Part shown: positions 6,400 through 51,181 of the stretch, in pieces
How positions within the stretch are numbered: position 1 is the first letter of the stretch
How the letters are laid out: the number at the start of each line of letters is the position of its first letter
IMG/VR virus record: IMGVR_UViG_3300017917_002466
Span: 124,001 to 188,000 of that record
Length of the DNA: 64,000 bases
Strand: one strand, 5' to 3'
Translations under genes and position numbers: made by a program
The notes under the pieces: model-generated
What the model was told of the DNA's origin: nothing
The model's database searches: none
Seen by the model: only the letters and a program-made list of their open reading frames with translations

Positions 6400-6455
6400 T
6401 TTTGCTCCTTGCGCCGAACTATTAATTCAAAGCGCGGTTAAATTTCGCACAACGT

Positions 6456-6761
6456 TCAGCGCACAGCCGATGCGGTACGCCCCGTGCTACGCTTCCCACG
6501 TTTCGGCTTGCGCTTGTTGGCCGATGTGCCTGCCGACTCAAATTTTACCAGCGGGCGACCCGGCGTAGTTACGAGAAGTCGAAGAAAGTAAATCGCTGCA
6601 TCGTTAGCCACTTTGTGCAGCTTTTTATAAGAATCGCGGCAGCCTTGTTGCCTGAACGTGTCAACAAAAGCCATTGCGATATTCGACTGCCACGCATATC
6701 GATACCCTTCGTCTTTTTTCAGGGCTGCCGCCACCATTTTGAATGCCTGTTGAAACTTCAT
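6456..6761 (-). CDS. cassette ORF, paralog of 33538..33795
   Basis: MKFQQAFK..AL..D.G...A.Q.NIAMA shared with 33538..33795; basic tail encoded by attC. Confidence 0.7.
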   Translation of the reverse strand: MKFQQAFKMVAAALKKDEGYRYAWQSNIAMAFVDTFRQQGCRDSYKKLHKVANDAAIYFLRLLVTTPGRPLVKFESAGTSANKRKPKRGKRSTGRTASAVR

Positions 6762-7640: not shown

Positions 7641-7680
7641 CAACTAGTTAAATGATGTCATTCCCTTGTCTAACTCTTTG
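7641..7680 (-). other. attI-like recombination site, copy 1
   Basis: 40 bp identical to 33852-33891; ends at the GTT of the first cassette. Confidence 0.8.
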
Positions 7681-7697
7681 TTTTCTCCTATACATTT

Positions 7698-7726
7698 AAT
7701 ATACAACAGGAAACCGTTCTTGTCAA
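7698..7726 (-). promoter_or_regulatory. promoter facing cassette array 1 (Pc-like position)
   Basis: TTGACA-N17-TATATT immediately upstream of the attI-like site. Confidence 0.8.
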
Positions 7727-7991
7727 GCCCTTTCTTACATCACCGAAACAAACAGATTCACGTCAGGGGCTTCCATTGCCTTCTTCAAAAATTCAACATC
7801 GGCATCTGTAATGGGCCGAAGGAACTTCTTCTGATTCTCAACCATATCGCTCTTGGCGATTACCAAGGCACGATAGTTGTCATACTCTCGCTTCGTCCAA
7901 CCACCAGTGAAATTCATGTTGCCTCCCTTTCTTACTATCAATATACACTATGGAAGAAGGATTGTCAAGCCCCAAAGTTGAAGTCCTTTTA

Positions 7992-13457: not shown

Positions 13458-13540
13458 TCCCCATCCCTTCGTTAAATGTTTGTTTCTCTCACCTACACAT
13501 TTAATATACAACAGAAAAGGGATTTTGTCAAGCCCTATAT

Positions 13541-13909: not shown

Positions 13910-14234
13910 ACGCCTCCCTTATGTTGATTGTTTCTTTTCCCTACATATCTAATATACATCAAGGAAATTGTTTTGTCAAGCCTTAATTACGAAAAGAATC
14001 AACTCGCATTAGTTGATCTTTTCAAGAGAAAATGTTTCGCCTTCATAAACATATTTCAACTGAACATCTTCTGCTTCTGCTCTTGTCAAGATTTTGGGGT
14101 TTGCACCCTTTGCACCCTTTGCAACATAAATCGGCATCCCTTGAACAGTTCCCTCAAAGACCCAAACTTTCCCCTCTGCATCTGTTACCTTTGCAATGTA
14201 TAATTCTTTCATATTTGTTTTTCCCCATCCTCTC

Positions 14235-14645: not shown

Positions 14646-14715
14646 ATTTCCTCCCTCGTTAATGTTGTTCTTTCAACACATATAATATACAACAAGAACT
14701 GAAAAAAGTCAATCC

Positions 14716-15066
14716 CTATTTGACATTATCAAATTTTACCATAGCTGCATTTTTGCTATTAAAAGACCAGGCCCAATCACCAAACGATTCATTACCTGGA
14801 AACATTTCCGAAGGTGGATAATTATATACTTGACCTTTCTTTTTACCGTGCTTTTGAATCAATGAATATCCTTTTTGAACCTTAATCAAAAAGACTTCGT
14901 ATCCGACAGTCTTGCCGACCTCTCCATTGATTTCTTTTTCTATCTTTTGTTCGTAGACAGCTGCCTTGTCTGAACGACAGACCTGAACGTATTCGTATCC
15001 GTTCTTGGACTTCGTCTGAGGCAGCTTCTCGTAGGTCTTTGGGGCAGGTGCTTTGGTTCGTGCCAT
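14716..15066 (-). CDS. hypothetical protein
   Basis: GYEVF and E.FP.NE.FG.WAW; own promoter. Confidence 0.65.
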   Translation of the reverse strand: MARTKAPAPKTYEKLPQTKSKNGYEYVQVCRSDKAAVYEQKIEKEINGEVGKTVGYEVFLIKVQKGYSLIQKHGKKKGQVYNYPPSEMFPGNESFGDWAWSFNSKNAAMVKFDNVK

Positions 15067-15178
15067 TGTTCTTTCTCCCTTCCCTAATAATATACATCAC
15101 GGACGAAGGATTGTCAAGCCCTAAAAAAATGAATATGCCGCCAGTTTGGAATCCTTTCAGTTAAAGTTATCTTCTTTC

Positions 15179-15502
15179 CTATATAAAATTGACAATTCTT
15201 GAAATTCGATTTCGATAAACTTCGGTCTCAGTTATCGTTCTCTTTTTGCAATCTACGGTCACAAGGTATTCAATGTCTCCGTGCATATTGGTTCCGATGC
15301 CGTAGCCAGTCTCGCCAGCCTCATCGCCGCGAACCATCTCACAGAAGATGATGCGAGCAAGATATTCAGGATCATCCTGGCGGCCCTTCCCAACAGGACT
15401 GTTGACAGCCTTCACAACCTTATCCATCAGATTGTCGCCATCCCAATGCTGGTACAGATAGACACCTTCATCCTTGATAAACACCTGCGCTCTTGTTCCC
15501 AT
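15179..15502 (-). CDS. conserved phage hypothetical protein
   Basis: MGTRA, YLYQHWDG and HGDIEY motifs. Confidence 0.7.
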   Translation of the reverse strand: MGTRAQVFIKDEGVYLYQHWDGDNLMDKVVKAVNSPVGKGRQDDPEYLARIIFCEMVRGDEAGETGYGIGTNMHGDIEYLVTVDCKKRTITETEVYRNRISRIVNFI

Positions 15503-15552
15503 TGTTTTCCTCTCTTTCTATACAGATAATATACATCAAGGAAATTATTTTG

Positions 15553-15858
15553 TCAAGACCTTTTATTTCCACATTGACCACAGTAATTATCTTTGTCATT
15601 AAAAGCGTTTCCGCAATTACGACAATAATTATCTTTCTTACAATTTTTCACGGGAGTTGTAGCCAATGTACTTATTAATCCTTCATCTCTTGCTTCGTCA
15701 ATATGCCTGCAATTTTTACGATATTCAAATCCTCTACAATCACAAGTAATAACACCATCAACAAACTTAATAGTATAATCATTTCCACTGTATGAATGAC
15801 ATATAATCTCATGACATTCATCATTCATTATCAATTCAAAATCATCTTTAAAACTCAT
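15553..15858 (-). CDS. SWIM zinc finger plus zinc ribbon protein
   Basis: TCDC.GF.YR..CRHI; C-terminal CxxC...CxxC. Confidence 0.7.
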   Translation of the reverse strand: MSFKDDFELIMNDECHEIICHSYSGNDYTIKFVDGVITCDCRGFEYRKNCRHIDEARDEGLISTLATTPVKNCKKDNYCRNCGNAFNDKDNYCGQCGNKRS

Positions 15859-17418
15859 TGGGTAACCTTTCGTTTATATTCCACAATATTCACATGATCC
15901 ATTGATATGAAACAAATGATAATTTCTCTCAGTGATATATCCGTAATCATACATGCCATGTTTAACAGGAACCATAAACTTATTAGGTCGAGTTTTCCAA
16001 GTCTTCACTTTGCCGTTGACTCTCCAACGAACACAAGTACCATCAGCATTCATTTCATCATTCATCGCGAGAACATCATGATAATGAAGATTTTTAGCTT
16101 TATCAATTGTCAATGCAACCATCTTATTCCTCGCCTTCTATTCTGTCAATGTTGATTTCTTGTTCATCATTGTTAGTATCATTTTCGATACCGGCAACTT
16201 CACAAAGAGAATCCCAGACTCCAATTTCGATAGCATAATCTGTTAAATCACTTTTACGAAGTACCATATTGTTTCTCCCTTCAACAATAATATACAACAA
16301 AACATCCGATTTGTCAAGCCCTAAAATCTCTCGACAACCGTAAAGTGATCACCTTTCCCTCTTGCGGCGATCTCAGGCAATTGTTTTTCGCAACCAGCCA
16401 GAGTCCTGAAGCCTGACCAATCCATCTCGTCATAAAGAATAAGGAAGTTTGCGCTCTCAACATTTCCCCTTGGTTCACTTACCTTAATGAACGAACCAAA
16501 ATGTTCCTGACAGTAGATTAATTGGTCCATGATGTTTAGCCTTTCATTAGTTAGTTATCTTACGCCTGTAGTATCCATACGGAACTGACATATCAGGAGT
16601 ATTGACTTTATTACCAAAAAGCTGTTCACCTACACTCTTCCATTTTCTGTAGATCGGTTCATTGCGAACCATCAAAGACACATCATCACCCTTGACAATT
16701 ATCTCCCCAATGTTCAACAGACGATAACCCTCGCCAGGATAAACCACTTCGTAAAAGAAAGCTTTCATAGTTCACATACTCCAATAGGTTTCGGATGAAG
16801 GATCGCAACACAAGGGAGTGTTTACGGGCTGTGTGAATTCTTTGCCACTTATCAAATTCTTTTTTGTCACCTGCTTTTCGATTTTAGTATGAAAGATAGA
16901 TTCGTCTTCGATAGCATAATCGTCTTTATTTGTTAAAACTATTCCCATATCATTAAACTCTCTTTTCATAACACGAGTCATGAATCCCTTTGCAGTTCTT
17001 TTAAATGTAAACCTTTTGGGATTTAATGAACCACCTAATAGTCTTGTAGTCTTTTTATTGTATATGATATACATATTAAATCCTTTCTATGCATTTAATA
17101 TAATACATAAAAGAAGAAAAGTCAAGCCCTATTTTAATCTATTTAATAAATCAATTGCTTGCTGTTGATACTTTTCAACTTTATTAAAATTATCTGTGAT
17201 AAAGAAATAATCGGTTCCGGTGTTTCCTAATACACATGAACTATCCATCCAATATGAATATCCATCCGAGTCTGTATAAGACCAATAAAATCCATCAGAA
17301 GTCTTTATACTTAGGCTAACTCTTTTTGAATATTCCCATTCACTTTTGTCTCTATTCCATTGACGAGTAAATACATTATTCTTTGTAAAGACTAAATCAG
17401 TTATATTGTAATTCATAA

Positions 17419-17622
17419 TCAATCCTCCTTAAAAAACTTTTTTGTTTTATTCCTCGGCAATTCGTTCCAATTTCTTACCGCTATTTTATGATCAAATTCG
17501 TCTGCGTGTTCGTCATTACGACCATTATTTTGTTTGGGACCAGTCATCAAACACACATTACATTCGACATAAACATAACGATCATTCAGATCAGTACTAC
17601 CACAATTAGGACAAGGTTTCAT
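17419..17622 (-). CDS. Lar-like restriction alleviation zinc ribbon protein
   Basis: MKPCPNCGS, VECNVC, A...WN pattern. Confidence 0.55.
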   Translation of the reverse strand: MKPCPNCGSTDLNDRYVYVECNVCLMTGPKQNNGRNDEHADEFDHKIAVRNWNELPRNKTKKFFKED

Positions 17623-17632
17623 TTGATTTCTC

Positions 17633-17811
17633 CTAGCTGTTATGATTATAATAACAATCATCAGAACAACAAGTTTGATTATTAGATTCTGGCTTAAAAT
17701 CACAACCACACCAAAGACAATTACGAACTTCATTCATCCATGCATCAGGACAACCATGTTCATGACAAAGAACACCATTAATAACGAGAGTTTCACATGA
17801 TCGACACATAG
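17633..17811 (-). CDS. Cys-rich protein, paralog of 9575..9796
   Basis: MCRSCETLVINGVLCHEHGCPDAW. Confidence 0.65.
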
Positions 17812-17869
17812 ATTGTTTTATCCTTTCTGTATATCTAATATACATCAGAATGATTATTATGTCAAGCCC

Positions 17870-18590
17870 TATTTTCTTTTATTTGGGGCTTGACAATATT
17901 AAGCCCGTGTTGTATATTATAATCATAGGGTGACGAAAGTCATCAGAAGAGGCCAAGGGCGAGGGTAGCCCGCCCAGCCGGAGACGGGTTTAAGCGCTTA
18001 AACAAAGGCCCTCAAAAATCCTCCCTCACCAAACCCCTATTTAAACGCTTCAAATTCCATCGTAGATAGGAGCCTTTGTTGCCCCTATAAGGCCCCCTGC
18101 TACAGGATCAAACCTAGTGTCTATTTAAGCGGTTTGAATCAATTCCCATTGACACAATGTGGCGAGGCTGTGACACATCAAAATTGGGCTTAAGCGGTTA
18201 GCCTATTTAAACGATTAACAAAAAAAGAAAGGGCTTGACAAACACTCTGCTATGATGTATATTAATAGTACTGGAAGCCTCCAGCGAACGGGGAGATCGC
18301 TCTTTGATTTAACCGCTTAAATGAATGCTTAAGTTTCTTCGCCTTTGTCAATCCTTTTAGTCAATCTTCTCTGTCAATTTATCCCCTCTGAAACAGCTAA
18401 ATATAATCTCTCATTATCCCCTATGAAAACAAGCCCTATTATCCCCTCTGAAATATCCCCCAAAGGCTCATTGACAATTACCTTCTAATATGTTATCTTG
18501 TATTATAGGTGGTGAAAGAGCCTATCCGAGCGTTTGCGGGCTTATGGGGGCTCTAGTACCCACGTATTTAAGCCCTTAAAAAGGAGCCTT
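17870..18590. promoter_or_regulatory. divergent non-coding control region with plus-strand promoters, palindromic sites and direct repeats
   Basis: TTGACA promoters at about 17890, 18235, 18471; TTTAANCGNTTAAA-like sites; three ttatcccct[ca]tgaaa repeats at about 18379-18454. Confidence 0.65.
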
Positions 18591-24484: not shown

Positions 24485-24558
24485 GCTTCAGCCAATCTAT
24501 TTTGGAGTTTATACATATAATTATATCATTTGATATTTGATTTGTCAAGAAGTAATAT

Positions 24559-24659
24559 CATAAATATTTGTAGAAGTTAGGAGACAGCCTCCGGCCGGTG
24601 GTTTCTTTACCGCAATAAAGATTATCTTAACTTCCTTACTTAACCTTTGCGGAGGAGCC
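24559..24659 (+). ncRNA. late-type promoter plus structured pseudoknot leader RNA, copy 2
   Basis: gaagttagga/tcttaacttc; tcttta-ccgcaa-taaaga; ttgcgg(agg). Confidence 0.8.
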
Positions 24660-25343
24660 ATGATTCTTTCTAAAACTGTTCAAGTTAAAATTAGCCGAAG
24701 AAATATTAAACATTATTTGTCTCTTGGTTATGTTATTCCAAAACATACTGATATTTATAATCGCCTTTGTAATCAAATAGGGATTCTAATTGAAGTATCT
24801 ATTGGACATTTACTCAAAGGAAGTAAAGTAAAAGTTCTTTGTAAATGTGACGAATGTGGAAAAGAAAATTTAACTTATTACAACGAATCTCTTAAATTCA
24901 AATATATTTGTAAAAATTGTGCTGCTAACCAACCTAAAAGATTAGAAAAGTTAAAAAATGCTATGACTGGTAAAAAACATTCCGAAGAAACTAAAAAGAA
25001 AATGAGTGAACATAATTGGGCAAAGAATCATACTGGAAAACTACATCCTTGTTACAATTCTAATCTTACTTTTGAAGACCGATATCTAGGTAGAAATAGA
25101 AATGTACAGCCAGAAAATTATCAATGGAAAAAGAAAGTTAAAGAAAGAGATAATCATATTTGCCAAAAATGTGGCTCAAAAGAAAATCTATGCGTTCATC
25201 ATCTTAACAACTATAAATCATTTGAAAACGAAAGGTATGACATTAAAAATGGAATTACCTTATGTGTTGGATGTCATAAGGAATTCCATAAAAGATATGG
25301 TCGTTTAACTACCAAAGAGCAAATAAAGGATTTTATAGGGTAA
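24660..25343 (+). CDS. HNH homing endonuclease with NUMOD3-like motif
   Basis: KHSEETKKKMSE; RDNHICQKCG...VHH...NGITLCVGCHKEFH. Confidence 0.85.
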   Translation: MILSKTVQVKISRRNIKHYLSLGYVIPKHTDIYNRLCNQIGILIEVSIGHLLKGSKVKVLCKCDECGKENLTYYNESLKFKYICKNCAANQPKRLEKLKNAMTGKKHSEETKKKMSEHNWAKNHTGKLHPCYNSNLTFEDRYLGRNRNVQPENYQWKKKVKERDNHICQKCGSKENLCVHHLNNYKSFENERYDIKNGITLCVGCHKEFHKRYGRLTTKEQIKDFIG

Positions 25344-25632: not shown

Positions 25633-26481
25633 CTAACGGGCATTTCGCACAACAGTGTCCTGCGCGGGGCTTCTTAGCGCATGGATGCGCTCTTCTGCTA
25701 TCCGGCAGTATTTCTCTTCCTTCTCAATTCCGATGTAATTCCGGCCAGTATTAATACAAGCGATTGCAGTAGTACCGGAACCAATGAACGGGTCTAAAAT
25801 TGTATCACCACAAAAAGAATAATAAGAAATCGCTTTTGTAGCCAACTCTAATGGGAACGGAGCTGGATGTCTATTACGCTCCGGGTTGATTTTCCATACA
25901 TTTGTTCTTTCGTAACCATCCAGCACTTTGGATTTTTTTATTATCTCTTGTGAATGAGAACGAATTGATTTGTCCAGTAAGCACCCCGGCTTTGAAAACA
26001 CCAGTATATATTCTGTAATATTAAATGTTTTGTACGCAACTGGTCTACGATGGTGCGAAAATTTGATTGCTCGACTTGATGCACCATCTGGCTTTACCCA
26101 TATAATGTCGTCTAAGAATGTCCATTTTTTTGAAAGCATAGAACAAACATCAAACGGTATTGGTATTCGTTTTGATTCTGTGCTTCTTTTTTTCCTCGCT
26201 TCAATAACGCATGACAAGTTCAGCACAAATATTCCCGCCGGTTTTATCTTTGTATGTGCCGTATTAAAAACTGTGTCTAAAAAAGATAGATACGAGGCAT
26301 ACGATTCGTATTTTGAATAACACCTTGCATTATAATACGGCGGTGATGTTAAAATCATATCCACGCTCTCGTCTGGTATAGTCTGCATGACTTCGAGGCA
26401 GTCCCCGCATGTTACGGTATTTGTCTTCGGCGCAGGACGCGCCGTGTCTTGCCCCGCGCCTATAATTTCAGAATTTGCCAT
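25633..26481 (-). CDS. DNA methyltransferase (N4-C/N6-A, beta-type motif order), last unit of array 2
   Basis: GDCLE, ILTSPPY, HPAPFP, ILDPFIGSGTT, GIE; ATG 5 nt after GTTAGGT. Confidence 0.9.
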   Translation of the reverse strand: MANSEIIGAGQDTARPAPKTNTVTCGDCLEVMQTIPDESVDMILTSPPYYNARCYSKYESYASYLSFLDTVFNTAHTKIKPAGIFVLNLSCVIEARKKRSTESKRIPIPFDVCSMLSKKWTFLDDIIWVKPDGASSRAIKFSHHRRPVAYKTFNITEYILVFSKPGCLLDKSIRSHSQEIIKKSKVLDGYERTNVWKINPERNRHPAPFPLELATKAISYYSFCGDTILDPFIGSGTTAIACINTGRNYIGIEKEEKYCRIAEERIHALRSPAQDTVVRNAR

Positions 26482-26516
26482 ATTGCACCTAACGGTTCGG
26501 CAAACGTAAGCCGTGC

Positions 26517-26738
26517 CTACGAATGCGTGCGACAAGGATATTTTACGTGAACGCACTGACGGTCGTAATTCTCCACACAGCACGTTGTTTGGCATGGCTT
26601 GCTTTGCCTGTTGTTTGTCTGTTGAGCGAGTACAGCGGATTTCAGAGTTTGCCAATGCAACCGCCCCTTAGTTTGCAAGTGCTCCGATAACTCATCAAAC
26701 CATTGAACCGCATCAGATATTTCGTTACTCATTGGCAA
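26517..26738 (-). CDS. cassette ORF with attC-encoded Cys-rich tail
   Basis: One ORF per cassette; AGGAG RBS. Confidence 0.55.
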   Translation of the reverse strand: MPMSNEISDAVQWFDELSEHLQTKGRLHWQTLKSAVLAQQTNNRQSKPCQTTCCVENYDRQCVHVKYPCRTHS

Positions 26739-26780
26739 ACTCCTATCAGTAAATTTAAGAGCGAAATTGCAAACAACGTA

Positions 26781-27095
26781 TCACGCACCCGCCCGTTGTT
26801 TGTCCGTTATCCACTTACAGCACCGAGGGCACCAAGCATCTATACCGCTATATGGATACACTGGTGCCTTACCACATGTAGGACAAATTACGGGCTGCGT
26901 GTGTTGTGGGACCGTGGGCAATTCTACCGCAATCTCTGCGCGGCGATCTTTTACCCATTGCTCCATTTCGATTTGATCATTACTCAATACCACCAACGCA
27001 TCATTAGGGATTTTCCCACCATGACGAAAAGGTGCCGTGACCTTGTTGACTCGGCAAAGGAACATCTCAAGCCTGTGTATGTCTTCGACGCGCAT
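26781..27095 (-). CDS. cassette ORF with attC-encoded zinc ribbon
   Basis: CPTCGK...CPRC lies inside attC 26771-26909. Confidence 0.6.
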   Translation of the reverse strand: MRVEDIHRLEMFLCRVNKVTAPFRHGGKIPNDALVVLSNDQIEMEQWVKDRRAEIAVELPTVPQHTQPVICPTCGKAPVYPYSGIDAWCPRCCKWITDKQRAGA

Positions 27096-27721
27096 AATAA
27101 TTCCTTTTGAATTGCCCATGTACCACAACGTTTAGCGCACGGGTGATAGTTTGCCCGTGGCTCGACAAAGCCCACACTTTACCATACCAGTACCAGGATC
27201 GTCGGATAAATACTCGCCACTACCCATACACGTAGGGCAAATTTTACCCTGCGCTTGTTGGTTGATGCGGAGGGAAGCCACCTCAGCCTCCAGCGTGGCG
27301 ATAGCCCGTTCAAGAGACAAAAACCGATTCATAACAAATGATGGATCAGAGAAATCAATTTCGTTTACCACGCCACACCTCCATGTATAAAAAGCTGACC
27401 GAAGTTTCAACCAACGTCTGCCCTATGCTGACGTTTCTGTTTCAGAAATGTGGGAGTCATCGACCGAACAGCATTGGGCTGTTGTTTGCTGTGCGCTCGC
27501 TTCCACAAAACCTGCGGTTTGCGGAGTATCGAGAGGGCACCAATTTGGTATTTCAAAAGTAACATTGATAACAGACCTACCGCCATATAGAGGATGGTTG
27601 CAAATAAATCCACTCTGACTGTAGCACAAGGGACATTCGTTACAGCAACTAATTTTGATTACACGCATGAGCAAACCGCCTATCTATTCTCAAAAGAGCG
27701 CATTGCAACCAACGGTATCGG

Positions 27722-27958
27722 CTACGCCTGAAGTTTGCCCGTACCGTGACAACGCCAACAGTCCTTACCATTGTTATAATTATTGGTAGAACCAGACCCA
27801 GCAGGGAAACAGTCAGGGCAAATTTTAGGCTGGCCGTGTTGGTGGATGTGACGCTTGCTTCCACCAATTTTGCGGCGGGTCTTAAACTGATCCTCGCCAT
27901 AGTGGCCGGTTATGTAATTATCAAGTTCCTGACTCATGCGCTTATCGTTGCCGAACAT
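27722..27958 (-). CDS. cassette ORF with DnaJ-like Cys-rich tail
   Basis: ICPDC..GSG...CWRCHGTGK; GGAGG RBS. Confidence 0.6.
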   Translation of the reverse strand: MFGNDKRMSQELDNYITGHYGEDQFKTRRKIGGSKRHIHQHGQPKICPDCFPAGSGSTNNYNNGKDCWRCHGTGKLQA

Positions 27959-28590
27959 ATTTCCTCCCGCCGCTTACCAGTTAAAAGCAAGCGGCATTTA
28001 CACCAAGTTTGGCGCATTCGCACGAAGTTACGCCGTCTTATCGCACCAACAAGTAGAACACTGCTTGTGAGCAACATCAAACGGGCATATATCCAAGCCC
28101 CATTTACAAGAAGGCGTAATTTTGTGCTGCGCCTGTTGGTGGATGTGCCGCGTTTCTTCCGCAATGTCAGGCTGGCAATCTTCCAGCATGATAGGGCAAG
28201 AACCGGCGTGATCCACTATTTCATCTTGAGTGCCAAAGAAGCCGCAATATTTACATTTGCCAGCCATATAATAAACCTTTCTTGAAACGCGGCATTTACA
28301 CCAACGTTTGCTCAACCGCACGATAGTTGTCGCAATCGATCTACCACTGCTGTAACATAAGACACATAAACCTTGTGCTCAACAAACTCTTTGTAAAGAC
28401 TATCGGCTATTGCGGCAATTTCGTGCTTGAGCTGTTGTACGTCTGTGGAAGGAGCGGCTTCCTCAGCTTTAAGTGCTCGCATCACGGCAGGGCAACGGTC
28501 TACGTTTATACCCATACCGCTACACGGCAAAATGAATGACTTGTTATCCACGCGAGCACCTCCTAAATCGTAAAGAGCGACTGGAATTGC

Positions 28591-28722
28591 GTACAACGGT
28601 TCAGCAACGTGCGCCGTGCCTACAGGGCTTCACGGCAATATGGACACCACACAAACCCAGTATGGGCCTTGCCAAGACGAAGCCACTCGTGAAATTGGCA
28701 TGGCGTACTTGCCGTGTTGTGC
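28591..28722 (-). repeat. attC-like site, near-identical to 29438-29570
   Basis: About 105 bp internal identity with 2 visible substitutions; encodes NTASTPCQ[FY]HEWLRLGK.HTGFVWCPYCREAL. Confidence 0.85.
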
Positions 28723-28844
28723 GATGAATTTGTTGACTCCCTAATGTAAGCGCGAATTGCTTCTAACGCGGTAAAATCTTTTGAATATTTACACATTCTC
28801 TCTACTTGCAAAACGGCTTCGTGTATATCCATTCGCGCCTCCAA
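28620..28844 (-). CDS. cassette ORF (body family shared with 31415..31663)
   Basis: ALE.IRA...ESTNSSHN shared; tail shared with 29468 cassette. Confidence 0.65.
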   Translation of the reverse strand: MEARMDIHEAVLQVERMCKYSKDFTALEAIRAYIRESTNSSHNTASTPCQFHEWLRLGKAHTGFVWCPYCREAL

Positions 28845-28895
28845 TATGGTTCAACAAACTTTTGCACAACGGTTCGGCAAACGGGCGAAGTTGGT

Positions 28896-29063
28896 TTACC
28901 TCGACACGGAGGGCTGTTCTACGCCAATTTCGCCCTTTGCCTGTTGTGCGATGTTGTTTTTAATTACCTTAATTTCAGCGGCGATTTCTCGTAACCGAAG
29001 ATTATTAGCTACAACAAAGCACCACAACGATAAATAAGCCAGAAAGACAAAAAACCATTTCAT
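28896..29063 (-). CDS. cassette-borne 55 aa membrane protein
   Basis: MKWFFVFLAYLSLWCFVV... Confidence 0.55.
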   Translation of the reverse strand: MKWFFVFLAYLSLWCFVVANNLRLREIAAEIKVIKNNIAQQAKGEIGVEQPSVSR

Positions 29064-29109
29064 AATCGCCGCCTATAAATCAAAGATTAAAAACCATTTC
29101 GCCTAACGT

Positions 29110-29406
29110 CTACCGCATCGCACGAAGTTGCCGCGCCCAAACCCACAACCTACGATAAACCCCTGACGGTAGATTATTGTTATTGTCTACAAAGGCTTCC
29201 ATTTCTGCGGCAATTTTGTGCTGCGGTTGTTGCACGGGGCGCTTCGCCCGAACCGTTCGGCCCGTTTCCAAATTATCCAGCGCGGTGCGGACTGCTATTG
29301 CCCCGCTGTGGCCGAGAGAATAATTGACAACGGCAACCGCTTTGCCGTTACGACATACCTCAAACGCATAGCCAGTATCTTCTATCTCATATTTGGCACC
29401 GCGCAT
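29110..29406 (-). CDS. cassette ORF
   Basis: AGGA RBS; tail ..WARQLRA shared with 30599 cassette. Confidence 0.6.
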   Translation of the reverse strand: MRGAKYEIEDTGYAFEVCRNGKAVAVVNYSLGHSGAIAVRTALDNLETGRTVRAKRPVQQPQHKIAAEMEAFVDNNNNLPSGVYRRLWVWARQLRAMR

Positions 29407-29437
29407 ATTAACATCCTATCTTTAAGGGCCGAATGGC

Positions 29438-29570
29438 GTGCAACGTTCTCGGCAATGTACGCCGTGCCTACAGGGCTTCACGGCAATATGGACACCACAC
29501 AAACCCAGTATGGTCCTTGCCAAGACGAAGCCACTCGTGATATTGGCATGGCGTACTTGCCGTGTTAGGC
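29438..29570 (-). repeat. attC-like site, near-identical to 28591-28722
   Basis: GCCTAAC...GTTGCAC. Confidence 0.85.
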
Positions 29571-29701
29571 GATGTAGAAAGCGACTCCTTAACGTCCTCA
29601 AATTTGACAAATTCACCGTCGTCGCACTCCTCCATCCGAGCATGCGTGCCATACATATCGCTCGTGACCTTATAATCGTACCGTGTCAAATTTACATCCA
29701 T
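29468..29701 (-). CDS. cassette ORF (NLTRY...G..VKF.D.KE body family)
   Basis: Body related to 32217..32474 and 31696..31962. Confidence 0.6.
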   Translation of the reverse strand: MDVNLTRYDYKVTSDMYGTHARMEECDDGEFVKFEDVKESLSTSPNTASTPCQYHEWLRLGKDHTGFVWCPYCREAL

Positions 29702-30598
29702 ATATCGCTCTCGCTTTCTATTTCGCATAACGTCTGCCACACGGTTGATCGTTACGGCCTACCTTGCCAATCACCAGATTCACGTTCAGGAACATCATAT
29801 CGCCGTTTAGATAAATCTCCATAATATGAATAGGCCGTAATGTCAACCTGTGGCTGTTGTACGTCTGTGGAAGGAGCGGATTCTTTAGTTAATGCGGTGC
29901 AGCCATGACCGACACCCTGAACACCTTGCCACTCCCACCGAGCTTGTATATAGTGACGACAATCTTTGAACATTTGCACCGCCTTATAGATCGTTTAGAG
30001 CGACTGGAATAGCGTACAACGTGTGCCAAAGTATGAAGGTGTGAAACAATTTGCGAAGCGAACATACTTTGGCTGTTGTGTGTTGGTTTTCGCTCCACAA
30101 TATTAAAAAGCAATTTGGCGATTGTAACGAGGCCAACTCAACCACCCTCGTATCCCATCGGGCGTCCCCTTTGGTGGTCTACATAGCCGTGGACGGCTTA
30201 GCCAAATTGCCTATAAATTCAAAGAGCGAAAACTTACACACAACGTATACGCTATTGTGAAGTAACTATGTTATTTAGGCGCTCCTCTAACTGTGAAATA
30301 AGCGACAATGCCTGTGGATACGACTCCATTGCTGACGGAACTGAATCCCGTAGAAACTTGAGCGCCGCCACAATAGCGTTGTTGTGCGAAGGTTTTAACG
30401 CCTCCTCACAAAACATTTTTATGCGACCCCACGCCAGTTGTTCAGACGAAGACCCTTTTGCATTAACAAGTGCGCTAACAGATGATAGTTCATTTTCAAG
30501 CATAAAAACTCCTAAATAAAAAGCGTTAAAACTTTTGCACAACGGGATCAGGCATTGCCCGACAGTTTGCGCGGTGCTTCACAAGCGATACAAACGCT

Positions 30599-30895
30599 TC
30601 ACAAAGCGCGAAGTTGCCGCGCCCATTTACTTAACTGCTCTGCACTTGGTACGCCACCGATATTTGCTATGCGCACACCATCCTCAAGCTCAGTGGCAAT
30701 TTGGGCGATAGCCGCGCTTTGTGTGTTGGTTGATGTGGAAGGAATGCCCACCTTATTTTTCTTTCGGCGGGTAATCTTTCTCCACCACGAATGAACAACG
30801 GAACAGATAATAGCAACCAATCCTATTGCCAACGCTACGCCAAGGAACACCAGCCCAAACACATCATGAAACGTCCATACGAAAATAGAACCCAT
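30599..30895 (-). CDS. cassette ORF, membrane protein
   Basis: AGGAG RBS; long hydrophobic segment. Confidence 0.6.
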   Translation of the reverse strand: MGSIFVWTFHDVFGLVFLGVALAIGLVAIICSVVHSWWRKITRRKKNKVGIPSTSTNTQSAAIAQIATELEDGVRIANIGGVPSAEQLSKWARQLRAL

Positions 30896-30954
30896 TTTTT
30901 TCTCCTTACCCGCCGAACTATTAATTCAAAAGCGGGATTTATTTTGCACAACGG

Positions 30955-31131
30955 TCAGCGCACAGCCGATGCGGTACGCTTACCATTTTTGCTACCCCGT
31001 TTCGGCTTGCGCTTGTTGTGTGCTGTTCGGCGCGACTCTAATCGCTCCCAGGCGGCCAGCTCCGCATCACCACGGGCCTCCGCCGCACCCATCACAGCAT
31101 CAAAATCATCAGGACCATAATCGTTTTTCAT
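30955..31131 (-). CDS. cassette ORF of 58 aa; basic tail shared with 6456..6761
   Basis: HNKRKPKRGSKNGKRTASAVR vs ANKRKPKRGKRSTGRTASAVR. Confidence 0.6.
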   Translation of the reverse strand: MKNDYGPDDFDAVMGAAEARGDAELAAWERLESRRTAHNKRKPKRGSKNGKRTASAVR

Positions 31132-31414
31132 TTGGCCGCCTTTACAATAACGCTCTCACGCCGAATGGCATCACAACGTTCACCGCACGCCGGATGCGGT
31201 ACTCCGTTTACGGCTGCGGGTGTTGTGCGAAGTGCGGCCCGCTTCCGCAAGTATTGGCGCGACTTCGCTACGGTGCGCCCACTGACCTTCCTTGTCAAAC
31301 ACAAACCTTGCAATTACTTTTCCACAGCAAATCTCAGTTTTCAATGAATACCACTGCAGTTTTTTTCGCGCCATTATAACCTCCAAAAGGGCCGCATTTT
31401 GCACAACGTCTGCG

Positions 31415-31663
31415 CTACTGGTGCTGTGCGCATACTAAGCAGGCATGTTTTTTACACTTTCGACTAGTAATTACACCACAGTCGTAACCAGCTCCGATGT
31501 GCGCTTCGCATGGCACCATAGCGCTGTTGTGCGATGAATTTGTTGACTCCGCCAGTGCTGCGCGAATGGTTTCCAATGCACATTTACAATCTGGACACTG
31601 GTGTTGATCCACGACTATTTGAAAATGAGCCAAGGCTTTCTTAATTTCCATTCGCGCCTCCAA
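31415..31663 (-). CDS. cassette ORF
   Basis: 5' end near-identical to that of the 28620 cassette. Confidence 0.6.
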   Translation of the reverse strand: MEARMEIKKALAHFQIVVDQHQCPDCKCALETIRAALAESTNSSHNSAMVPCEAHIGAGYDCGVITSRKCKKHACLVCAQHQ

Positions 31664-31695
31664 TATGGTTCAGCAAATTTTTCGCACAACGTATG

Positions 31696-31962
31696 CTAAA
31701 CGGCTGATGCCTTGCGCTGGATAAAATAGTCGTGAACATCTGGATACCACACACATTTACGACATTTATATAAATCCTCGTAATCGCTACCATAGTACGT
31801 TTCACATTCCTTACAGCGCAAGGTTTCAGCCTTTAGCGGTTGGTTGCCTGTTTGTGAAAGCTCCTTAGTGTCGGCAAATTTTAAATATACTCCGTCACCA
31901 CCTTGATGTATGTCGCAATCACAATCGCAACTATTAAACACAAATGTTCTGAAATTTGCCAT
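31696..31962 (-). CDS. cassette ORF with zinc-binding tail
   Basis: AAGGAG RBS; CKEC...CRKC inside attC. Confidence 0.6.
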   Translation of the reverse strand: MANFRTFVFNSCDCDCDIHQGGDGVYLKFADTKELSQTGNQPLKAETLRCKECETYYGSDYEDLYKCRKCVWYPDVHDYFIQRKASAV

Positions 31963-32216
31963 ATAATATCGCTCCTTTCACAAATTGCAACCAACGGTTG
32001 CCAAAGTATGAAGTTTACGTTTCGTAAATTTGCGAAGCGAACATACTTTGGCTGTTGTGTGTTGGTTTTCGCTTCACAATAATGTAAGGCGCGGGGCTGC
32101 ATAGGCTGAGTAGTGACCACCGCAGCATATATCTCCACCGAAAGTACGGTGAACCCTCAATTGTCACCGCGCCATATAAATTCCAAAGAGCGAAAACTTT
32201 CACACAACGGTTCGCA

Positions 32217-32474
32217 CTACTGCTGTTCGTGCCAATCGGTTCGTTTGCCAGTAAACCTACTGCACGCATGGCACGTGGGGCTGACACAACCACCTATGTT
32301 ACGTTTGCAAGATTGGCATGACAGCATAGCGCTGTTGTGCGATGAATTTAGAAGCTCCTTAATGTCGTCAAATTTAACCCAAGCCCCCTCATCGGATGCA
32401 ACCATTTGATGAAAATTATCCATAGTTTTAGTACGGTTAAACCACTCTAAATTATAACGGGTTAAATTTGCCAT
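32217..32474 (-). CDS. cassette ORF with zinc-binding tail
   Basis: 5' UTR identical to the 31696 cassette, different attC. Confidence 0.6.
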   Translation of the reverse strand: MANLTRYNLEWFNRTKTMDNFHQMVASDEGAWVKFDDIKELLNSSHNSAMLSCQSCKRNIGGCVSPTCHACSRFTGKRTDWHEQQ

Positions 32475-32868
32475 ATAATATCGCTCCTTTCACAAATTGC
32501 AACCAACGTTTACGCAACGGGTGAAGTCGCCACAACTTTTAGATTATGACAATACCCTTGCTTTAATGTACAATGATCCGATAAACACTTTAAACTACAC
32601 TCGATTTCACCCTTGCGTTGTTGGTTGTCTGTAAAATTTTCTACCTTAGATGCAAGAGCGGCACACCATACGAGATGGGTATACTGCTCCTTATCTAACG
32701 TAGATTTACAACCAATACTATCAAACCATTCTCTACAAGTGCCGCTCATATAAACTCCAAAGAAAATTTTATTGCAACCAACGTTTGACAAATGGTGAAG
32801 TCGTGTACTCACGATTTAGGCTTTTCGTTACCATTTGTTTGTTGTAAGATGTTTATGCCACTTCCTTA

Positions 32869-33165
32869 TTATCCGTTGGCGCATCTTTGTTTTTTGATAT
32901 AGTCTAAAAGTGTAACCTGTTCTTTTTCTGGTAACTGTTCAATCACTTTTTTATTGAAAAAATATTCATCCGTAAAACCACCAACAAAATCTAACCATTT
33001 TCCTGAAATCTTTGGTAATGGTAACTCGGTGCCCCGATAAGATGCAGACATAAATATCTCTGCTGGTACGCCGTTTAATTTCCGGTAAAGTGTTCCCCCA
33101 CCACTTTTCTGATGTTCCTCTGGATACGGTGGGTTCCAAACGCCTGTGAATTTTAGTTTTTGCAT
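32869..33165 (-). CDS. cassette ORF ending before its attC
   Basis: AGGAG RBS; 98 aa. Confidence 0.65.
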   Translation of the reverse strand: MQKLKFTGVWNPPYPEEHQKSGGGTLYRKLNGVPAEIFMSASYRGTELPLPKISGKWLDFVGGFTDEYFFNKKVIEQLPEKEQVTLLDYIKKQRCANG

Positions 33166-33496
33166 TTTTTCTCCTGCGCCAACATCTGAATATCAGAGTG
33201 GCATAAATTTCTTACAACGTTCACCGCACAGCCGATGAATTGCGCTGCCAGTTACAAGAAAGATTTTTTACACATACATCACCAAACCCTGCTTGATAAC
33301 TACACATTCCACTATATGCACAAAGCAATTTTTCGGCTTGCGGTTGTTGTGGGATGTGGAGCGCAGGTTCCTTAGTGTCCTGCGCGGCACGCTTCGCCCA
33401 AAAATCAATCCATTCATCACGAGTAATAGCTGGTTTAGATGGCATAATGTGACTTTCTATGAGCCGCGCCTATCATATAGACCTGCGCGGAATTTA

Positions 33497-33560
33497 CCAC
33501 AACGTCTGCGCAACTGCGCGTAGTTGGGCCTTGACAATTACGACGCTTGCGCTGTTGGTG
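33497..33560 (-). repeat. attC-like site of first cassette of array 2
   Basis: CACCAAC agcgcaa...ttgcgcagac GTTGTGG; R'' matches the cassette start GTTGGTG. Confidence 0.85.
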
Positions 33561-33795
33561 GATGTGCCTGCCGACTCCGCTTGCTCTGCGGGCGAACCGG
33601 CGTCAACAACAGCGCGAGGAAATGATCGGCGGCGCGATTGCCTATAGTGTGCCGTTTGGCCGATGAATCACGGCTACCCTCCCAACGAGCACAGTCGTAA
33701 TACGCCATGGCGATGTTGGCCTGATAGGCACGGTACAGCCCCTTGTCGCGCCGTAACGCCCTTGTGAATACCTTGAACGCCTCTTGAAACTCCAC
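33538..33795 (-). CDS. first cassette ORF of array 2, paralog of 6456..6761
   Basis: AGGAGG RBS; GTG start. Confidence 0.7.
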   Translation of the reverse strand: MEFQEAFKVFTRALRRDKGLYRAYQANIAMAYYDCARWEGSRDSSAKRHTIGNRAADHFLALLLTPVRPQSKRSRQAHPPTAQAS

Positions 33796-33851
33796 AGGCG
33801 CCTCCTTATTGTTCGCCCGCCTACAATCGCGTTCTCGGCAGGCATTTACAC

Positions 33852-33891
33852 CAACTAGTTAAATGATGTCATTCCCTTGTCTAACTCTTTG
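33852..33891 (-). other. attI-like recombination site, copy 2
   Basis: CAAAGAGTTAGACAAGGGAATGACATCATTTAACTAGTTG, identical to 7641-7680. Confidence 0.8.
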
Positions 33892-34095
33892 ATTTTCATA
33901 AAATTTTTTAAACTTATTGCTCAATTTATCTAATGGATAACCGTCTTGTATTAAAGCCCTTATTACAGCATACCGAATATATTTAGAACGAGTAATTTTT
34001 AGCTTTTCTCCTTGATGCAAACAACCAGTTGCTAAAACTGGTTCTAAATATATCTTATAGTCACTTCTTATCTTATCAGACCATTTTGCTTTCAT
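33859..34095 (-). CDS. small basic protein, possible ribbon-helix-helix DNA-binding protein, overlapping the attI-like site
   Basis: ITRSKYIRYAV motif; promoter TTGACA-N17-TATATT at 34102-34130. Confidence 0.5.
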   Translation of the reverse strand: MKAKWSDKIRSDYKIYLEPVLATGCLHQGEKLKITRSKYIRYAVIRALIQDGYPLDKLSNKFKKFYENQRVRQGNDII

Positions 34096-34368
34096 ATTTT
34101 AAATATATATTATTTTAATGAATTTGTCAACCCCTCTGAACAATTATATCATCAGCCAACATTGCAATACCTTTGTTATCGCTTCTTCTATTTAAAATTG
34201 CGGTCTTGAAATCTCTTGTCATTAACTTCTTTGCGACTTCGTATTCTTCATCAGTCAAATTGAATGTAGATGGATATACCCTCATATTTCGGTTGATCGC
34301 AGACATATCCCAAACTTCAAGAACCTTTGTCTTGCTTGTCAGTTTAAAGTAAGGCTGAATACGTTCCA

Positions 34369-34740: not shown

Positions 34741-34795
34741 AAAGTTCTCCTTTTCTATAATATAATGATTGCCAAATGTTTTGTCAAGGTCTTTC

Positions 34796-34990
34796 TATAA
34801 ATACATATAGAAGTTAAGAGACAGCGACTGATCCTCGTTTCTTTGCTTACCCAAAGATTATCTTAGCTTCCTCACTTAAACTCGGTAAGGAGTATCTTAT
34901 GCCAAGAAAATCCACTCGTGAAGAATTCATTACTAAAGCTAATCAAATCCACAATTTCAAATATGATTACTCCAATACAACGAATCAATT
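34796..34990 (+). pseudogene. leader RNA copy 3 plus N-terminal endonuclease remnant
   Basis: cttacc/ggtaag pseudoknot; ATG 34899 MPRKSTREEFITKANQIHNFKYDYS then homology lost. Confidence 0.75.
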
Positions 34991-35835: not shown

Positions 35836-36082
35836 TATAAATATATATATGAAGTTAGAAGACAGGGAGTAATTAACCTTTCTTTGCCAATCCAAAGATT
35901 ATTCTGACTTCCTTGTTGTGGCTCTAAAAAACATCTTCAAGCCCATCATATTAACAACTTCAGAGATTTCAAAGAACAAAGGCTTCTAGTCGAAAACGGT
36001 ATTACTTTGTGTCAAGAATGTCATAAATTAATTCATAAACAATTCGGTCGTTTAACTAATAGAAAAAACTTAAACGAATTTA
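35836..36082 (+). pseudogene. leader RNA copy 4 fused to HNH C-terminal remnant
   Basis: Leader breaks after P1; CCGSKKHLQAHH...NGITLCQECHKLIHKQFGRLT. Confidence 0.75.
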
Positions 36083-51126: not shown

Positions 51127-51181
51127 AGATACTCCTTGGTAATATAATATGGTCGCGGCTAGTTTGTCAACTAGCCACAAC

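What the first reader, a model, noticed from the sequence alone, without database searches (positions are those of the whole stretch)
28591..32508. Protein-coding attC sites and mix-and-match of N-terminal bodies with attC-encoded C-terminal modules
Seen: most ORFs read through R'' and stop near R', so the attC encodes roughly 20-45 C-terminal residues, often CxxC zinc ribbons. The same attC/tail (NTASTPCQ[FY]HEWLRLGK.HTGFVWCPYCREAL; 28591-28722 vs 29438-29570) is joined to two unrelated bodies. The tail NKRKPKRG...RTASAVR is on unrelated bodies at 6456 and 30955. Conversely, related bodies carry different tails (28620 vs 31415; 29468 vs 31696 vs 32217; 28312 vs 29752; 6456 vs 33538). Established: classical cassettes move gene and attC together and attC is usually non-coding. 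Inference: exchange at or near R'' creates combinatorial small proteins, a protein-diversifying system.
Basis: partly seen in the sequence, partly recalled or inferred. Interest (0 to 1): 0.88.

Follow-up and report, generated by a model that had tools for sequence, protein, structure and literature searches.

The report
Protein-coding attC hairpins in phage cassettes
A 254-kb phage genome carries two integron-like arrays of about 33 tiny gene cassettes whose recombination hairpins (attC) lie inside the genes and encode the proteins' C-terminal tails, and gene bodies and hairpin tails have been re-paired many times at one end of the hairpin.

Summary
The window is part of a 253,664-bp phage contig. 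It holds two integron-type cassette arrays on the minus strand (25645-33855 and 5622-7644) and no integrase.

- **Read-through:** in 28 of 29 attC-like hairpins the upstream ORF crosses the hairpin and stops 5-37 nt before the GTT core. Tails are 6-43 aa (median 35), and 11 have four or more Cys.
- **Tails are translated, at least one under selection:** one tail with an outside relative gives dN/dS of about 0.15 in the ORF frame only.
- **Bodies and tails assort independently:** this holds inside the window and across metagenomes. Three body families each carry several unrelated tails, and three tails sit on unrelated bodies.
- **Junction position:** nine of ten mapped junctions lie within -5 to +9 nt of the AA|C of R''.
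- **Whole cassettes also move:** a 369-nt cassette is 100% identical in two contexts, with junctions at G|TT of R'.
- **Departures from classical attC:** the bulged base lies on the opposite arm, and the basal stem extends to about 20 nt. The only recombinase seen beside this attC type, on another contig, is a 275-aa Xer-like enzyme without the integron-integrase insert.

The mechanism of body/tail exchange and any dedicated diversifying role remain inferred. I rate this a new variant of a known kind.

The parts
25645..33855 (-). Cassette array 2: about 26 cassettes of 213-436 bp (the last one, a methyltransferase cassette, is about 850 bp), all in one orientation
   Evidence: R-box sites and cassette table. 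No strong promoter lies inside the array. GC is 0.46-0.48 against 0.31-0.38 in the phage backbone.
5622..7644 (-). Cassette array 1: 7 cassettes with the same attC type
33856..33891 (-). 36-nt left flank of array 2 (the 3' end of the 78-aa gene 33859-34095), identical to the left flank of array 1. It ends at the G|TT junction and is a candidate attI-like site.
   Evidence: Alignment A8. The 19-mer across the junction occurs only at these two places in IMG/VR.
7645..7680 (-). The same 36-nt left flank at the start of array 1. Here it directly follows an early-type promoter.
34102..34130 (-). Sigma-70-type promoter (11 of 12 matches) upstream of the 78-aa gene and array 2
7678..7727 (-). Early-promoter repeat copy immediately upstream of array 1
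   Evidence: family D1
28591..28722 (-). attC of cassette B18. It encodes the last 32 aa (C/H...CxxC) of ORF 28620-28832.
29438..29570 (-). attC of cassette B15. It shares 109 nt at 98% identity with the B18 attC and encodes the last 32 aa of ORF 29468-29701. Its own 3' arm pairs better with the shared 5' arm, so it is the likely donor.
32202..32340 (-). attC of cassette B05, encoding a 39-aa Cys-rich tail of ORF 32217-32474. Against the copy in L168 the tail gives dN/dS 0.15.
31401..31532 (-). attC of cassette B08 (ORF 31415-31651). The body is related to B18 and the tail is different. This is the clearest textbook fold, with a bulged G on the 3' arm.
30946..31021 (-). attC of cassette B10 (ORF 30955-31131), a 76-nt hairpin encoding a 20-aa basic tail. 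The same tail is on the unrelated body A04.
6447..6522 (-). attC of cassette A04 (ORF 6456-6761). The body belongs to a widespread ~65-aa phage protein family and the tail matches that of B10.
33497..33560 (-). attC of cassette B01 (ORF 33538-33795). The body belongs to the same family as A04. The tail is only 5-6 aa.
26771..26909 (-). attC of cassette B24 (ORF 26781-27095), with a CPTC...CPRC tail. Residues 1-55 of the body have 38 outside relatives with other C-termini.
27123..27267 (-). attC of cassette B23 (ORF 27132-27371). The tail has two CxxCxGxG-like knuckles.
28864..32067 (-). Further attC sites within the finding's span: 28864-28949, 29101-29236, 29725-29862, 30014-30081, 30238-30387, 30589-30731, 31171-31228, 31989-32067
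25633..26479 (-). N6/N4 DNA methyltransferase, the last cassette of array 2. Its ORF runs past a GTTGTGC box.
30020..30243 (-). ORF-less cassette with a short 68-nt attC. It has a sister copy at 31995-32207.

Best explanation
**What it is.** The region is part of an integron-type gene-cassette array in a jumbo-phage genome. No integrase lies within 64 kb, so it counts as a CALIN (an attC cluster lacking an integrase).

**Layout (shown).**
- Each array is probably transcribed from a phage early-type promoter placed in front of a shared 36-nt attI-like junction.
- Each cassette has a Shine-Dalgarno 5' UTR, a small ORF (about 48-104 aa) and an attC-like imperfect hairpin.
- The hairpin lies inside the 3' end of the ORF. 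The two arms and the variable centre are translated, and the stop codon sits in the 3' unpaired spacer just before the G|TT crossover.
- Whole cassettes move as in integrons, with junctions at G|TT of R'.
- ORF bodies and hairpin interiors have been re-paired repeatedly, with junctions at or next to the AA|C of R''.
- At least one tail is under purifying selection as protein. About 40% of tails look like Cys4 zinc knuckles.

**Inferred.**
- Translation through the hairpin is selected. It keeps the cassette compact, and it keeps ribosomes unwinding the hairpin on the polycistronic mRNA.
- The variable centre has been taken over to encode small C-terminal modules.
- Re-pairing happens at the R'' box in one of two ways. 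One is recombinase action on the coding strand, which here carries the bulged G that marks the recombined strand in classical sites. The other is short-homology recombination at the conserved adaptor sequences.
- The recombinase is probably a short Xer-like tyrosine recombinase, encoded elsewhere in the phage or by the host.
For: **Architecture and clustering of hairpins.**

**Read-through.** 28 of 29 sites against 30 of 58 in the other frames, with a shuffle maximum of 20. It is specific to this attC class: 22 of 31 in outside arrays of the same type, against 0 of 52 in classical AT-rich phage arrays.

**Translation signals.** Shine-Dalgarno motifs precede 21 of 30 starts. Promoters lie only upstream of the arrays.

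**Shared array start.** The 40 nt ending in GTTG are identical at both array starts.

**Classical cassette mobility.** L032 and L034 share a 369-nt cassette at 100% identity in different neighbourhoods, and the edges fall at GTTG. Each cassette's first ~20 nt is complementary to the ~20 nt ending at its own R''.

**Reassortment.**
- Searches show it within the window.
- The A04/B01 body family carries at least 8 tails, all diverging right after R''.
- The B05 body family carries at least 10 tails, all starting after SSHN, and the B05 tail sits on an unrelated body.
- The B24 body has relatives with other C-termini.

**Coding constraint.** The B05 tail against L168 shows 13 synonymous and 13 non-synonymous changes, giving dN/dS 0.15. 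The other two frames give about 1 or far above 1. Cys and CxxC are enriched in tails.

**Recent transfer.** B15/B18 differ by 2 non-synonymous and 0 synonymous changes in 109 nt, against 6 differences in the 30 nt of the 3' arm and R'.

**Candidate recombinase.** L034 1196-2023 sits beside an array of the same attC type.

**Published support.** attC hairpins hinder translation of downstream cassettes, and translation through them relieves this (review PMC8876359). Synthetic attC sites work when embedded in coding sequence (PMC7439510).
Against: - No tyrosine recombinase lies in the 64-kb window. The other 190 kb of the contig could not be read.
- The bulged base is on the arm opposite to classical sites, in 25 of 28 sites. 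The aadA1 control and the classical phage arrays have the canonical side. Recognition by a classical integron integrase is therefore not assured.
- Only one tail pair allowed a dN/dS test.
- Tails on the A04/B01 family are short and of low complexity, and most relatives of that body lack any tail.
- attC X is read in two frames in two contexts.
- All sequences are metagenome assemblies, and exact repeats of about 100 nt could cause chimeric joins in single cases.
- There are no expression data.
Confidence: 0.7

Rival explanations
1. The tails are mostly by-products. Selection acts only to keep the reading frame open, so that ribosomes melt the attC hairpin in the polycistronic mRNA and stop just before the next cassette. 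The peptide itself has no function, and the mix-and-match pattern has no adaptive meaning.
For: - The stop lies at the last possible place, -5/-6 from GTT, in 12 sites.
- The widespread body family works without a tail in most phages.
- Its attC tails are short and basic or of low complexity.
- The same attC is read in two frames in L032 and L034.
- Published work shows hairpins hindering downstream translation.
Against: - dN/dS is 0.15 for the 39-aa B05 tail, including its centre.
- CxxC pairs are enriched only in the ORF frame.
- Long variable centres keep the pattern CxxC...CxxC while their sequence changes.
Confidence: 0.3
2. Body/tail reassortment comes from general recombination, gene conversion or template switching at the short conserved adaptor blocks. 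These blocks are the 5' UTR start, the segment before R'' together with R'', and the 3' arm. On this view there is no site-specific cleavage at R''.
For: - The left edge of the 100% identical attC X lies 22 nt upstream of AA|C, at the start of a 24-nt shared adaptor.
- The 3' edge of the B15/B18 block lies inside the arm, about 20 nt before G|TT.
- Modules also break at the start codon, as in the attC plus next 5' UTR shared by A04-A05 and B10-B11.
Against: - In three pairs with a shared tail on unrelated bodies (B15/B18, B05/L168, A04/B10), the longest exact match left of AA|C is 6 nt or less. That is too short for homologous recombination.
- Nine of ten junctions fall within 15 nt of one another.
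Confidence: 0.4
3. The hairpins are not recombination sites. They are phage regulatory or RNA-processing elements, in the manner of the promoter-stem-loop cassettes of T4-type phages, and the likeness to attC is superficial.
For: - There is no integrase in the window.
- The bulge polarity is non-canonical.
- The window is rich in other repeated regulatory elements.
Against: - The AAC/GTT core boxes, the asymmetric spacer and the bulge recur at fixed positions.
- An identical cassette occurs in two contexts with edges at G|TT.
- Two arrays start at the same junction.
- A tyrosine recombinase lies beside the same attC type in L034.
Confidence: 0.05
4. The mosaic pattern is an artefact of metagenome assembly across repeats.
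For: Exact repeats of 100-110 nt exist.
Against: - The same pattern appears in independent assemblies from JGI, ENA, NCBI and Logan, with bodies 60-94% identical and junction homology far below assembler word sizes.
- The frames stay open across the junctions.
- The dN/dS signal argues for real coding sequence.
Confidence: 0.03

Closest known systems
Integron cassette arrays without integrase (CALINs) in phage genomes (Qi et al. 2023, PMC9892861)
   Same: Same-orientation attC sites separated by single small genes in virulent or uncharacterised phages. A DNA methyltransferase is among the cargo.
   Different: - The published phage CALINs are defined by as few as two attC sites (PMC9892861). 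Here there are about 33 cassettes in two arrays.
- The attC sites here lie inside ORFs.
- The bulge polarity is opposite.
- Each array starts at a shared junction behind a phage promoter.
Sedentary chromosomal integrons with array-wide similar attC sites, and the finding that cassette gene and attC are unrelated (Leon and Roy, cited in PMC3053210)
   Same: The same or similar attC occurs on unrelated genes. Related genes occur with different attC sites.
   Different: In those integrons, as generally described (my own knowledge), the attC follows the gene or overlaps only its end, so swapping it does not change the protein. Here it replaces 6-43 C-terminal residues.
Synthetic attC sites embedded in coding sequence (Nivina et al. 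2020, PMC7439510)
   Same: One DNA stretch is both a structured recombination site and a protein-coding segment.
   Different: - Those sites were engineered and tested with IntI1, and they have canonical extrahelical bases.
- The sites here are natural and numerous, sit at the C-terminus, and have non-canonical polarity.
Fused gene cassettes of class 1 integrons (PMC4670013)
   Same: New ORF combinations arise when an attC is partly lost or rearranged.
   Different: Those are described there as rare and as arising by loss of an attC. Here intact hairpins are retained and the pattern is systematic.
Short ORFs within attC that relieve the translational block (Jacquier et al. 2009, via review PMC8876359)
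   Same: Translation through the attC hairpin helps expression of the next cassette.
   Different: There a separate short ORF does this. Here the cassette's own ORF does.
Promoter-stem-loop modular shuffling in T4-type phages, and XerCD recombination of the folded single-stranded CTX phage site (both from my own knowledge, not checked here)
   Same: Short repeated elements flank small early phage genes and promote shuffling. A Xer-type recombinase can use a folded single-strand hairpin.
   Different: Neither involves hairpins that are translated as part of the protein.

Membership tests
Integron attC site / gene cassette | Inverted core sites RYYYAAC ... GTTRRRY at the two ends | tested here: met
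   The consensus is about GYACAAC ... GTTGKKY. Some sites are strict matches (GTTAGGC, GTTATGC). The GTT/AAC triplets are kept in nearly all sites.
Integron attC site / gene cassette | Imperfect hairpin with an R box, an unpaired central spacer, an L box and a variable terminal structure, 57-141 nt long | tested here: met
   Lengths are 58-150 nt, and the architecture is constant across sites.
Integron attC site / gene cassette | [quoted passage not shown] | tested here: not met
   There is a single bulged base, G in 13 sites, on the 3' arm of the gene-sense strand. In 25 of 28 sites the extra bases are on that arm. The aadA1 control and the classical phage arrays show the canonical side. The literature rule is in PMC3053210.
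Integron attC site / gene cassette | Cassettes found in different contexts with junctions at G|TT of R' | tested here: met
   L032 699-1067 equals L034 4771-5139 at 100% identity with different neighbours. Identity between sister cassettes starts at GTT.
Integron attC site / gene cassette | Gene and attC move as one unit, with the attC outside or only marginally overlapping the ORF | tested here: not met
   ORFs cross 28 of 29 hairpins. Bodies and hairpin interiors assort independently.
Complete integron | An integron integrase (a tyrosine recombinase with the extra IntI domain) adjacent to the array, with attI and Pc | tested here: not met
   - No tyrosine recombinase lies in the window, and the rest of the contig was not readable.
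- A promoter and a shared junction are present.
- The recombinase beside the same attC type in L034 is 275 aa and scores below the cut-offs for integron integrase and for XerC/D.
- It lacks about 40 residues of IntI1.
Zinc ribbon / CxxC zinc knuckle domain (tails) | Two CxxC (or C/H) knuckles about 10-25 residues apart, and a significant family match | tested here: inconclusive
   - Eleven of 29 tails have at least 4 Cys in knuckle spacing.
- Pfam matches are only weak: zf-CHCC at E 0.008 and DnaJ_CXXCXGXG at E 0.04, both below cut-off.
- No PDB sequence matched.
Diversity-generating or other dedicated protein-diversifying system | A dedicated enzyme and targeted variation of a defined protein segment | not testable with these tools
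   Only the outcome, the set of combinations, is seen. No enzyme or event rate is known.

The most novel reading that the evidence does not exclude
These hairpins may be natural structure-specific recombination sites that are used on both strands.

- Crossovers at G|TT would move whole cassettes.
- Crossovers at AA|C on the coding strand would swap the hairpin-encoded C-terminal module. That strand here carries the bulged G.
- Together these would give phages a built-in, mostly in-frame domain-shuffling device for small early proteins.
- The device would be run by a short Xer-like recombinase that lacks the integron-integrase domain.
Probability: 0.25. Interest if true: 0.9.

Novelty: new variant of a known kind. 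Interest (0 to 1): 0.75.

Why it matters
Integron cassettes are normally treated as a gene followed by a largely non-coding recombination site. Here the site is part of the gene.

- Each re-pairing of body and hairpin makes a new protein.
- This is a natural counterpart of the engineered coding attC sites, and a possible route by which phages diversify small early proteins, which are often host-takeover or anti-defence factors.
- The flipped bulge, the long basal stem and the neighbouring short Xer-like recombinase suggest an integron-like system outside the classical integrase family. Such a system would be missed or mis-annotated by current tools, which treat the attC as lying outside the gene.

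Tried and rejected
- **Rfam.** Nothing reached the gathering score in the window. The only hit in the region is a chance miRNA match on a short attC.
- **tRNA scans.** None were found in the window or in L006, so my reading of a tRNA-like cassette in L006 is not supported.
- **Phage database searches.** Neither the array nor the backbone matched anything.
- **Protein families.** Pfam on about 30 cassette proteins gave nothing significant.
- **Cassette-specific searches.** The protein search with the 28620 ORF returned only the window's own two proteins. The genome-collection scan with the cassette 5' UTR pattern found nothing, so no bacterial host or chromosomal integron of this type was identified.
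- **A pure flipped-cassette model**, with the crossover only at R'', is rejected. The identical cassette in L032/L034 is bounded by R' sites, and both arrays start at a lone GTTG junction.
- **A pure classical model**, with the crossover only at R', is rejected. Identical or near-identical hairpins sit on different bodies.
- **Uniform reading phase at R''** is not found. The phases are 16, 7 and 5, so not every body/tail pair would be in frame.
- **Literature.** Searches for natural coding attC sites found none. This is not proof of absence.

Full report
**Context.** The window corresponds to bases 124,001-188,000 of a 253,664-bp metagenomic contig (JGI 3300017917; IMG/VR UViG 3300017917_002466).
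- Nearly all genes lie on the minus strand.
- Phage-family hits include Thg1, an RlaP-like nucleotidyltransferase, an AAA ATPase with a VWA partner, NAPRTase, NAD synthase and HNH endonucleases.
- A sigma-70-type promoter repeat precedes more than 20 small genes.
- Nothing similar is present in the isolate-phage collection.
- Two islands of higher GC (0.45-0.48 against 0.31-0.38) hold the repeats in question.

**The repeats are attC-like hairpins in arrays.**
- On the minus strand each site starts with a box ending in AAC and ends with a box starting with GTT.
- DNA folding gives the same picture at site after site: a 6-7 bp R box, a spacer of 1 nt on the 5' side and 4-5 nt on the 3' side, 6 bp, one bulged base, 6 bp, a small internal loop, more stem and a weakly structured centre. 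All 13 z-scores are negative.
- A simple finder locates about 27 such sites in the two islands and about 5 elsewhere.
- Array 2 (25645-33855) has about 26 cassettes and array 1 (5622-7644) has 7. Most are 213-436 bp.
- No strong promoter lies inside. Each array is preceded by an early-type promoter.
- Each array is also preceded by the same 36 nt, which end at ...AACTA followed by GTTG. Beyond that point the two arrays differ. The 19-mer spanning this junction occurs only at these two places in the whole viral collection. This is what an attI-type junction with a crossover at G|TT would look like.
- No tyrosine recombinase is encoded in the 64 kb.

**The ORFs run through the hairpins.**
- In 28 of 29 sites the frame that is open upstream continues through R'', both arms and the centre. 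The other frames do so in 30 of 58 cases (p = 1e-5). Shuffled interiors give 12.7 on average and never more than 20.
- The stop codon is often the TAA or TGA formed by the last base of the 3' arm and the spacer, 5 nt before GTT.
- Tails are 6-43 aa, median 35.
- Most ORFs have a Shine-Dalgarno motif shortly after the preceding GTT box.
- The R'' box is read in all three phases (16, 7 and 5 sites). It is therefore conserved as DNA, not as peptide.
- Read-through is a property of this attC class. It holds in 22 of 31 sites in outside arrays of the same type and in 0 of 52 sites in classical AT-rich arrays on other large phage contigs.

**Are the tails real protein?**
- Cys is twice as frequent in tails as in bodies.
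- CxxC occurs 13 times in tails against 3 times in more than twice as many residues of the other frames. Eleven tails have at least four Cys.
- In outside arrays, hairpins with similar arms have quite different centres that still keep CxxC...CxxC.
- The one tail for which a diverged outside copy was found is the B05 tail against L168, 78% identical in DNA. It shows 13 synonymous and 13 non-synonymous differences (pS 0.56, pN 0.14, dN/dS about 0.15). The other two frames give ratios near 1 or far above 1 and contain stops.
- Family and structure searches gave nothing significant.

**Mix and match inside the window.**
- All-against-all comparison shows cassettes as patchworks of short near-identical blocks at three places: the 5' UTR, the 15-25 nt before R'', and the hairpin.
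- The B15 and B18 hairpins share 109 nt with two differences, both non-synonymous. Identity begins at the AAC of R'' and ends just past the stop.
- The 30 nt of 3' arm and R' hold six differences, and the bodies are unrelated. With no synonymous change, this is a recent transfer and not conservation by selection.
- The B15 3' arm pairs perfectly with the shared 5' arm and the B18 arm does not, so a B15-type site was the donor.

**Mix and match outside the window.**
- *The A04/B01 body family.* This body belongs to a widespread phage protein of about 65 aa. In most of 80 metagenomic loci it ends a few residues after the conserved core and has no hairpin. Where the attC type of this window is present, the ORF is extended into it. 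At least eight different tails follow the same body, and all diverge directly after R''. In one lineage the hairpin lies after the stop codon, the classical layout.
- *The B05 body family.* It has nine outside members at 44-94% identity. They carry at least ten unrelated tails that all begin after the residues SSHN, which is R''. The B05 tail also occurs on an unrelated body.
- *The B24 body.* It has 38 outside relatives that match only residues 1-55.
- *Junction positions.* Nine of ten mapped junctions lie within -5 to +9 nt of AA|C.
- *Homology at the junction.* In the three pairs with a shared tail on unrelated bodies, the longest exact match to the left of the junction is 6 nt or less.

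**Whole cassettes also move classically.**
- L032 and L034, two contigs of one study, share a 369-nt cassette at 100% identity with different neighbours on both sides. The edges fall at the GTTG of two R' boxes.
- The same two contigs share a 102-nt hairpin at 100% identity on different bodies, with the left edge 22 nt upstream of AA|C.
- Both kinds of event are therefore recent in one population. Neither a crossover only at R' nor one only at R'' explains both.
- Each cassette's first ~20 nt is the reverse complement of the ~20 nt ending at its own R''. This is expected if the excised circle re-forms a long-stemmed site from its own ends.

**Departures from classical attC.**
- In the aadA1 site of plasmid R100 the extra bases lie on the 5' arm of the gene-sense strand. 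These are the G and T of the folded bottom strand (rule in PMC3053210).
- Here 25 of 28 sites have the extra bases on the 3' arm of the gene-sense strand, 13 of them as a single bulged G at a fixed position. The outside array L034 does the same. Classical AT-rich arrays on other phage contigs have the canonical side.
- By the classical rule the coding strand would be the recombined strand and would be cut at AA|C of R''. The array starts and the L032/L034 cassette, however, point to G|TT. I cannot resolve this.
- In L034 a 275-aa tyrosine recombinase lies just upstream of an array of this attC type, in the same orientation. It is followed by an 11-6-11 palindrome and then the first GTTGGTG box.
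- That recombinase has the catalytic residues. It scores below the cut-offs for integron integrase and for XerC/D, and it lacks about 40 residues of IntI1 in the region of the integron-specific insert. From my own knowledge, that insert contacts the extrahelical bases, which would fit a different strand rule.

**Comparison with what is known.**
- Phage CALINs are described (PMC9892861).
- The lack of relation between a cassette gene and its attC is described.
- The hindrance of translation by attC hairpins, and its relief by translation through them, is described.
- Engineered attC sites inside coding sequence work.
- I found no report of natural attC sites that are systematically part of ORFs, nor of bodies and hairpin-encoded tails assorting independently.

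**Verdict.**
- The reading "exchange at or near R'' makes combinatorial small proteins" fits the pattern of junctions. It remains an inference on two points: the mechanism (site-specific action against short-homology recombination) and the purpose (functional modules against tolerated read-through peptides).
- The main caveats are that all data are metagenome assemblies, that only one tail pair gave a selection test, and that the rest of the contig and any expression data were out of reach.

Noticed in passing
window 1100-17900 and 53800-58800, minus strand: More than 20 copies of a 50-70 nt repeat: TTGACA, 17 nt, TATATT, then a Shine-Dalgarno site. It precedes small genes and looks like an early-promoter cassette reused across the genome.
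   Followed up: partly
window 24544-24647, 34780-34881, 35851-35924, 47324-47427, 62726-62827, 63538-63639: A second repeat family of about 100 nt, 65-91% identical, lying between gene blocks. Its function is unknown.
   Followed up: no
window 30020-30243 and 31995-32207, minus strand: Two cassettes without a convincing ORF. Their ends are conserved and form a 9-bp closing stem, the ~110-nt core varies, and each has a short 68- or 79-nt attC. There is no Rfam match. They may encode a small RNA.
   Followed up: partly
window 25633-26479 (-) and 24660-25343 (+): The last cassette of array 2 is an N6/N4 DNA methyltransferase whose ORF runs past a GTTGTGC box. An HNH/NUMOD3 endonuclease gene lies just beyond the end of the array on the other strand.
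   Followed up: partly
L110 842-6701, L146 4352-7416, L100 46-7753, L124/L128/L129 1426-7650, L147 267-6673: - Large IMG/VR phage contigs carry 8-14 classical AT-rich attC-like sites (cores GTTATAA / GTTAGCA).
- The sites lie directly upstream of, and in the same orientation as, a ~265-aa Xer-like tyrosine recombinase that lacks the integron-integrase insert.
- ORFs there do not enter the hairpins (0 of 52).
- This may be an integron-like platform with a short recombinase.
   Followed up: partly
window 7645-7680 and 33856-33891, minus strand: The shared 36-nt flank holds a perfect GTTAGAC core. In front of that core lies the 9-mer that precedes the crossover in attI1 of plasmid R100. The copy is exact in array 1 and has one mismatch in array 2. 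This may be chance.
   Followed up: partly
all cassettes of both arrays: The first ~20 nt of each cassette, from the preceding GTT box, is the reverse complement of the ~20 nt ending at the cassette's own R''. Beyond the R box, own pairs match at 6.7 of 17 positions against 4.5 of 17 for other pairs (p = 0.002). An excised circle would therefore have a basal stem of 20 bp or more.
   Followed up: partly
L006 11300-11960, minus strand: Another large phage contig (174,649 bp, with a 2110-aa fused RNA polymerase beta/beta' gene) carries a two-cassette cluster with the same attC type and the same 5' UTR module. ARAGORN did not confirm the tRNA-like look of one cassette.
   Followed up: partly
L170 449-6301: A Logan contig has a patatin gene, a run of small genes and a cassette of the B05 body family. 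It may be a relative of this phage with cassettes in a different place.
   Followed up: no
L032 621-707 and L034 6210-6296: The same 100% identical attC is entered in two different reading frames by two different bodies. This gives unrelated tails, and one of them runs past R'.
   Followed up: partly
window 50302-52108 and 56323-62127: A Thg1-like tRNA-His guanylyltransferase lies next to an RlaP-like nucleotidyltransferase, and there are NAD salvage genes (NAPRTase, NAD synthase). This is auxiliary metabolism typical of large phages.
   Followed up: no
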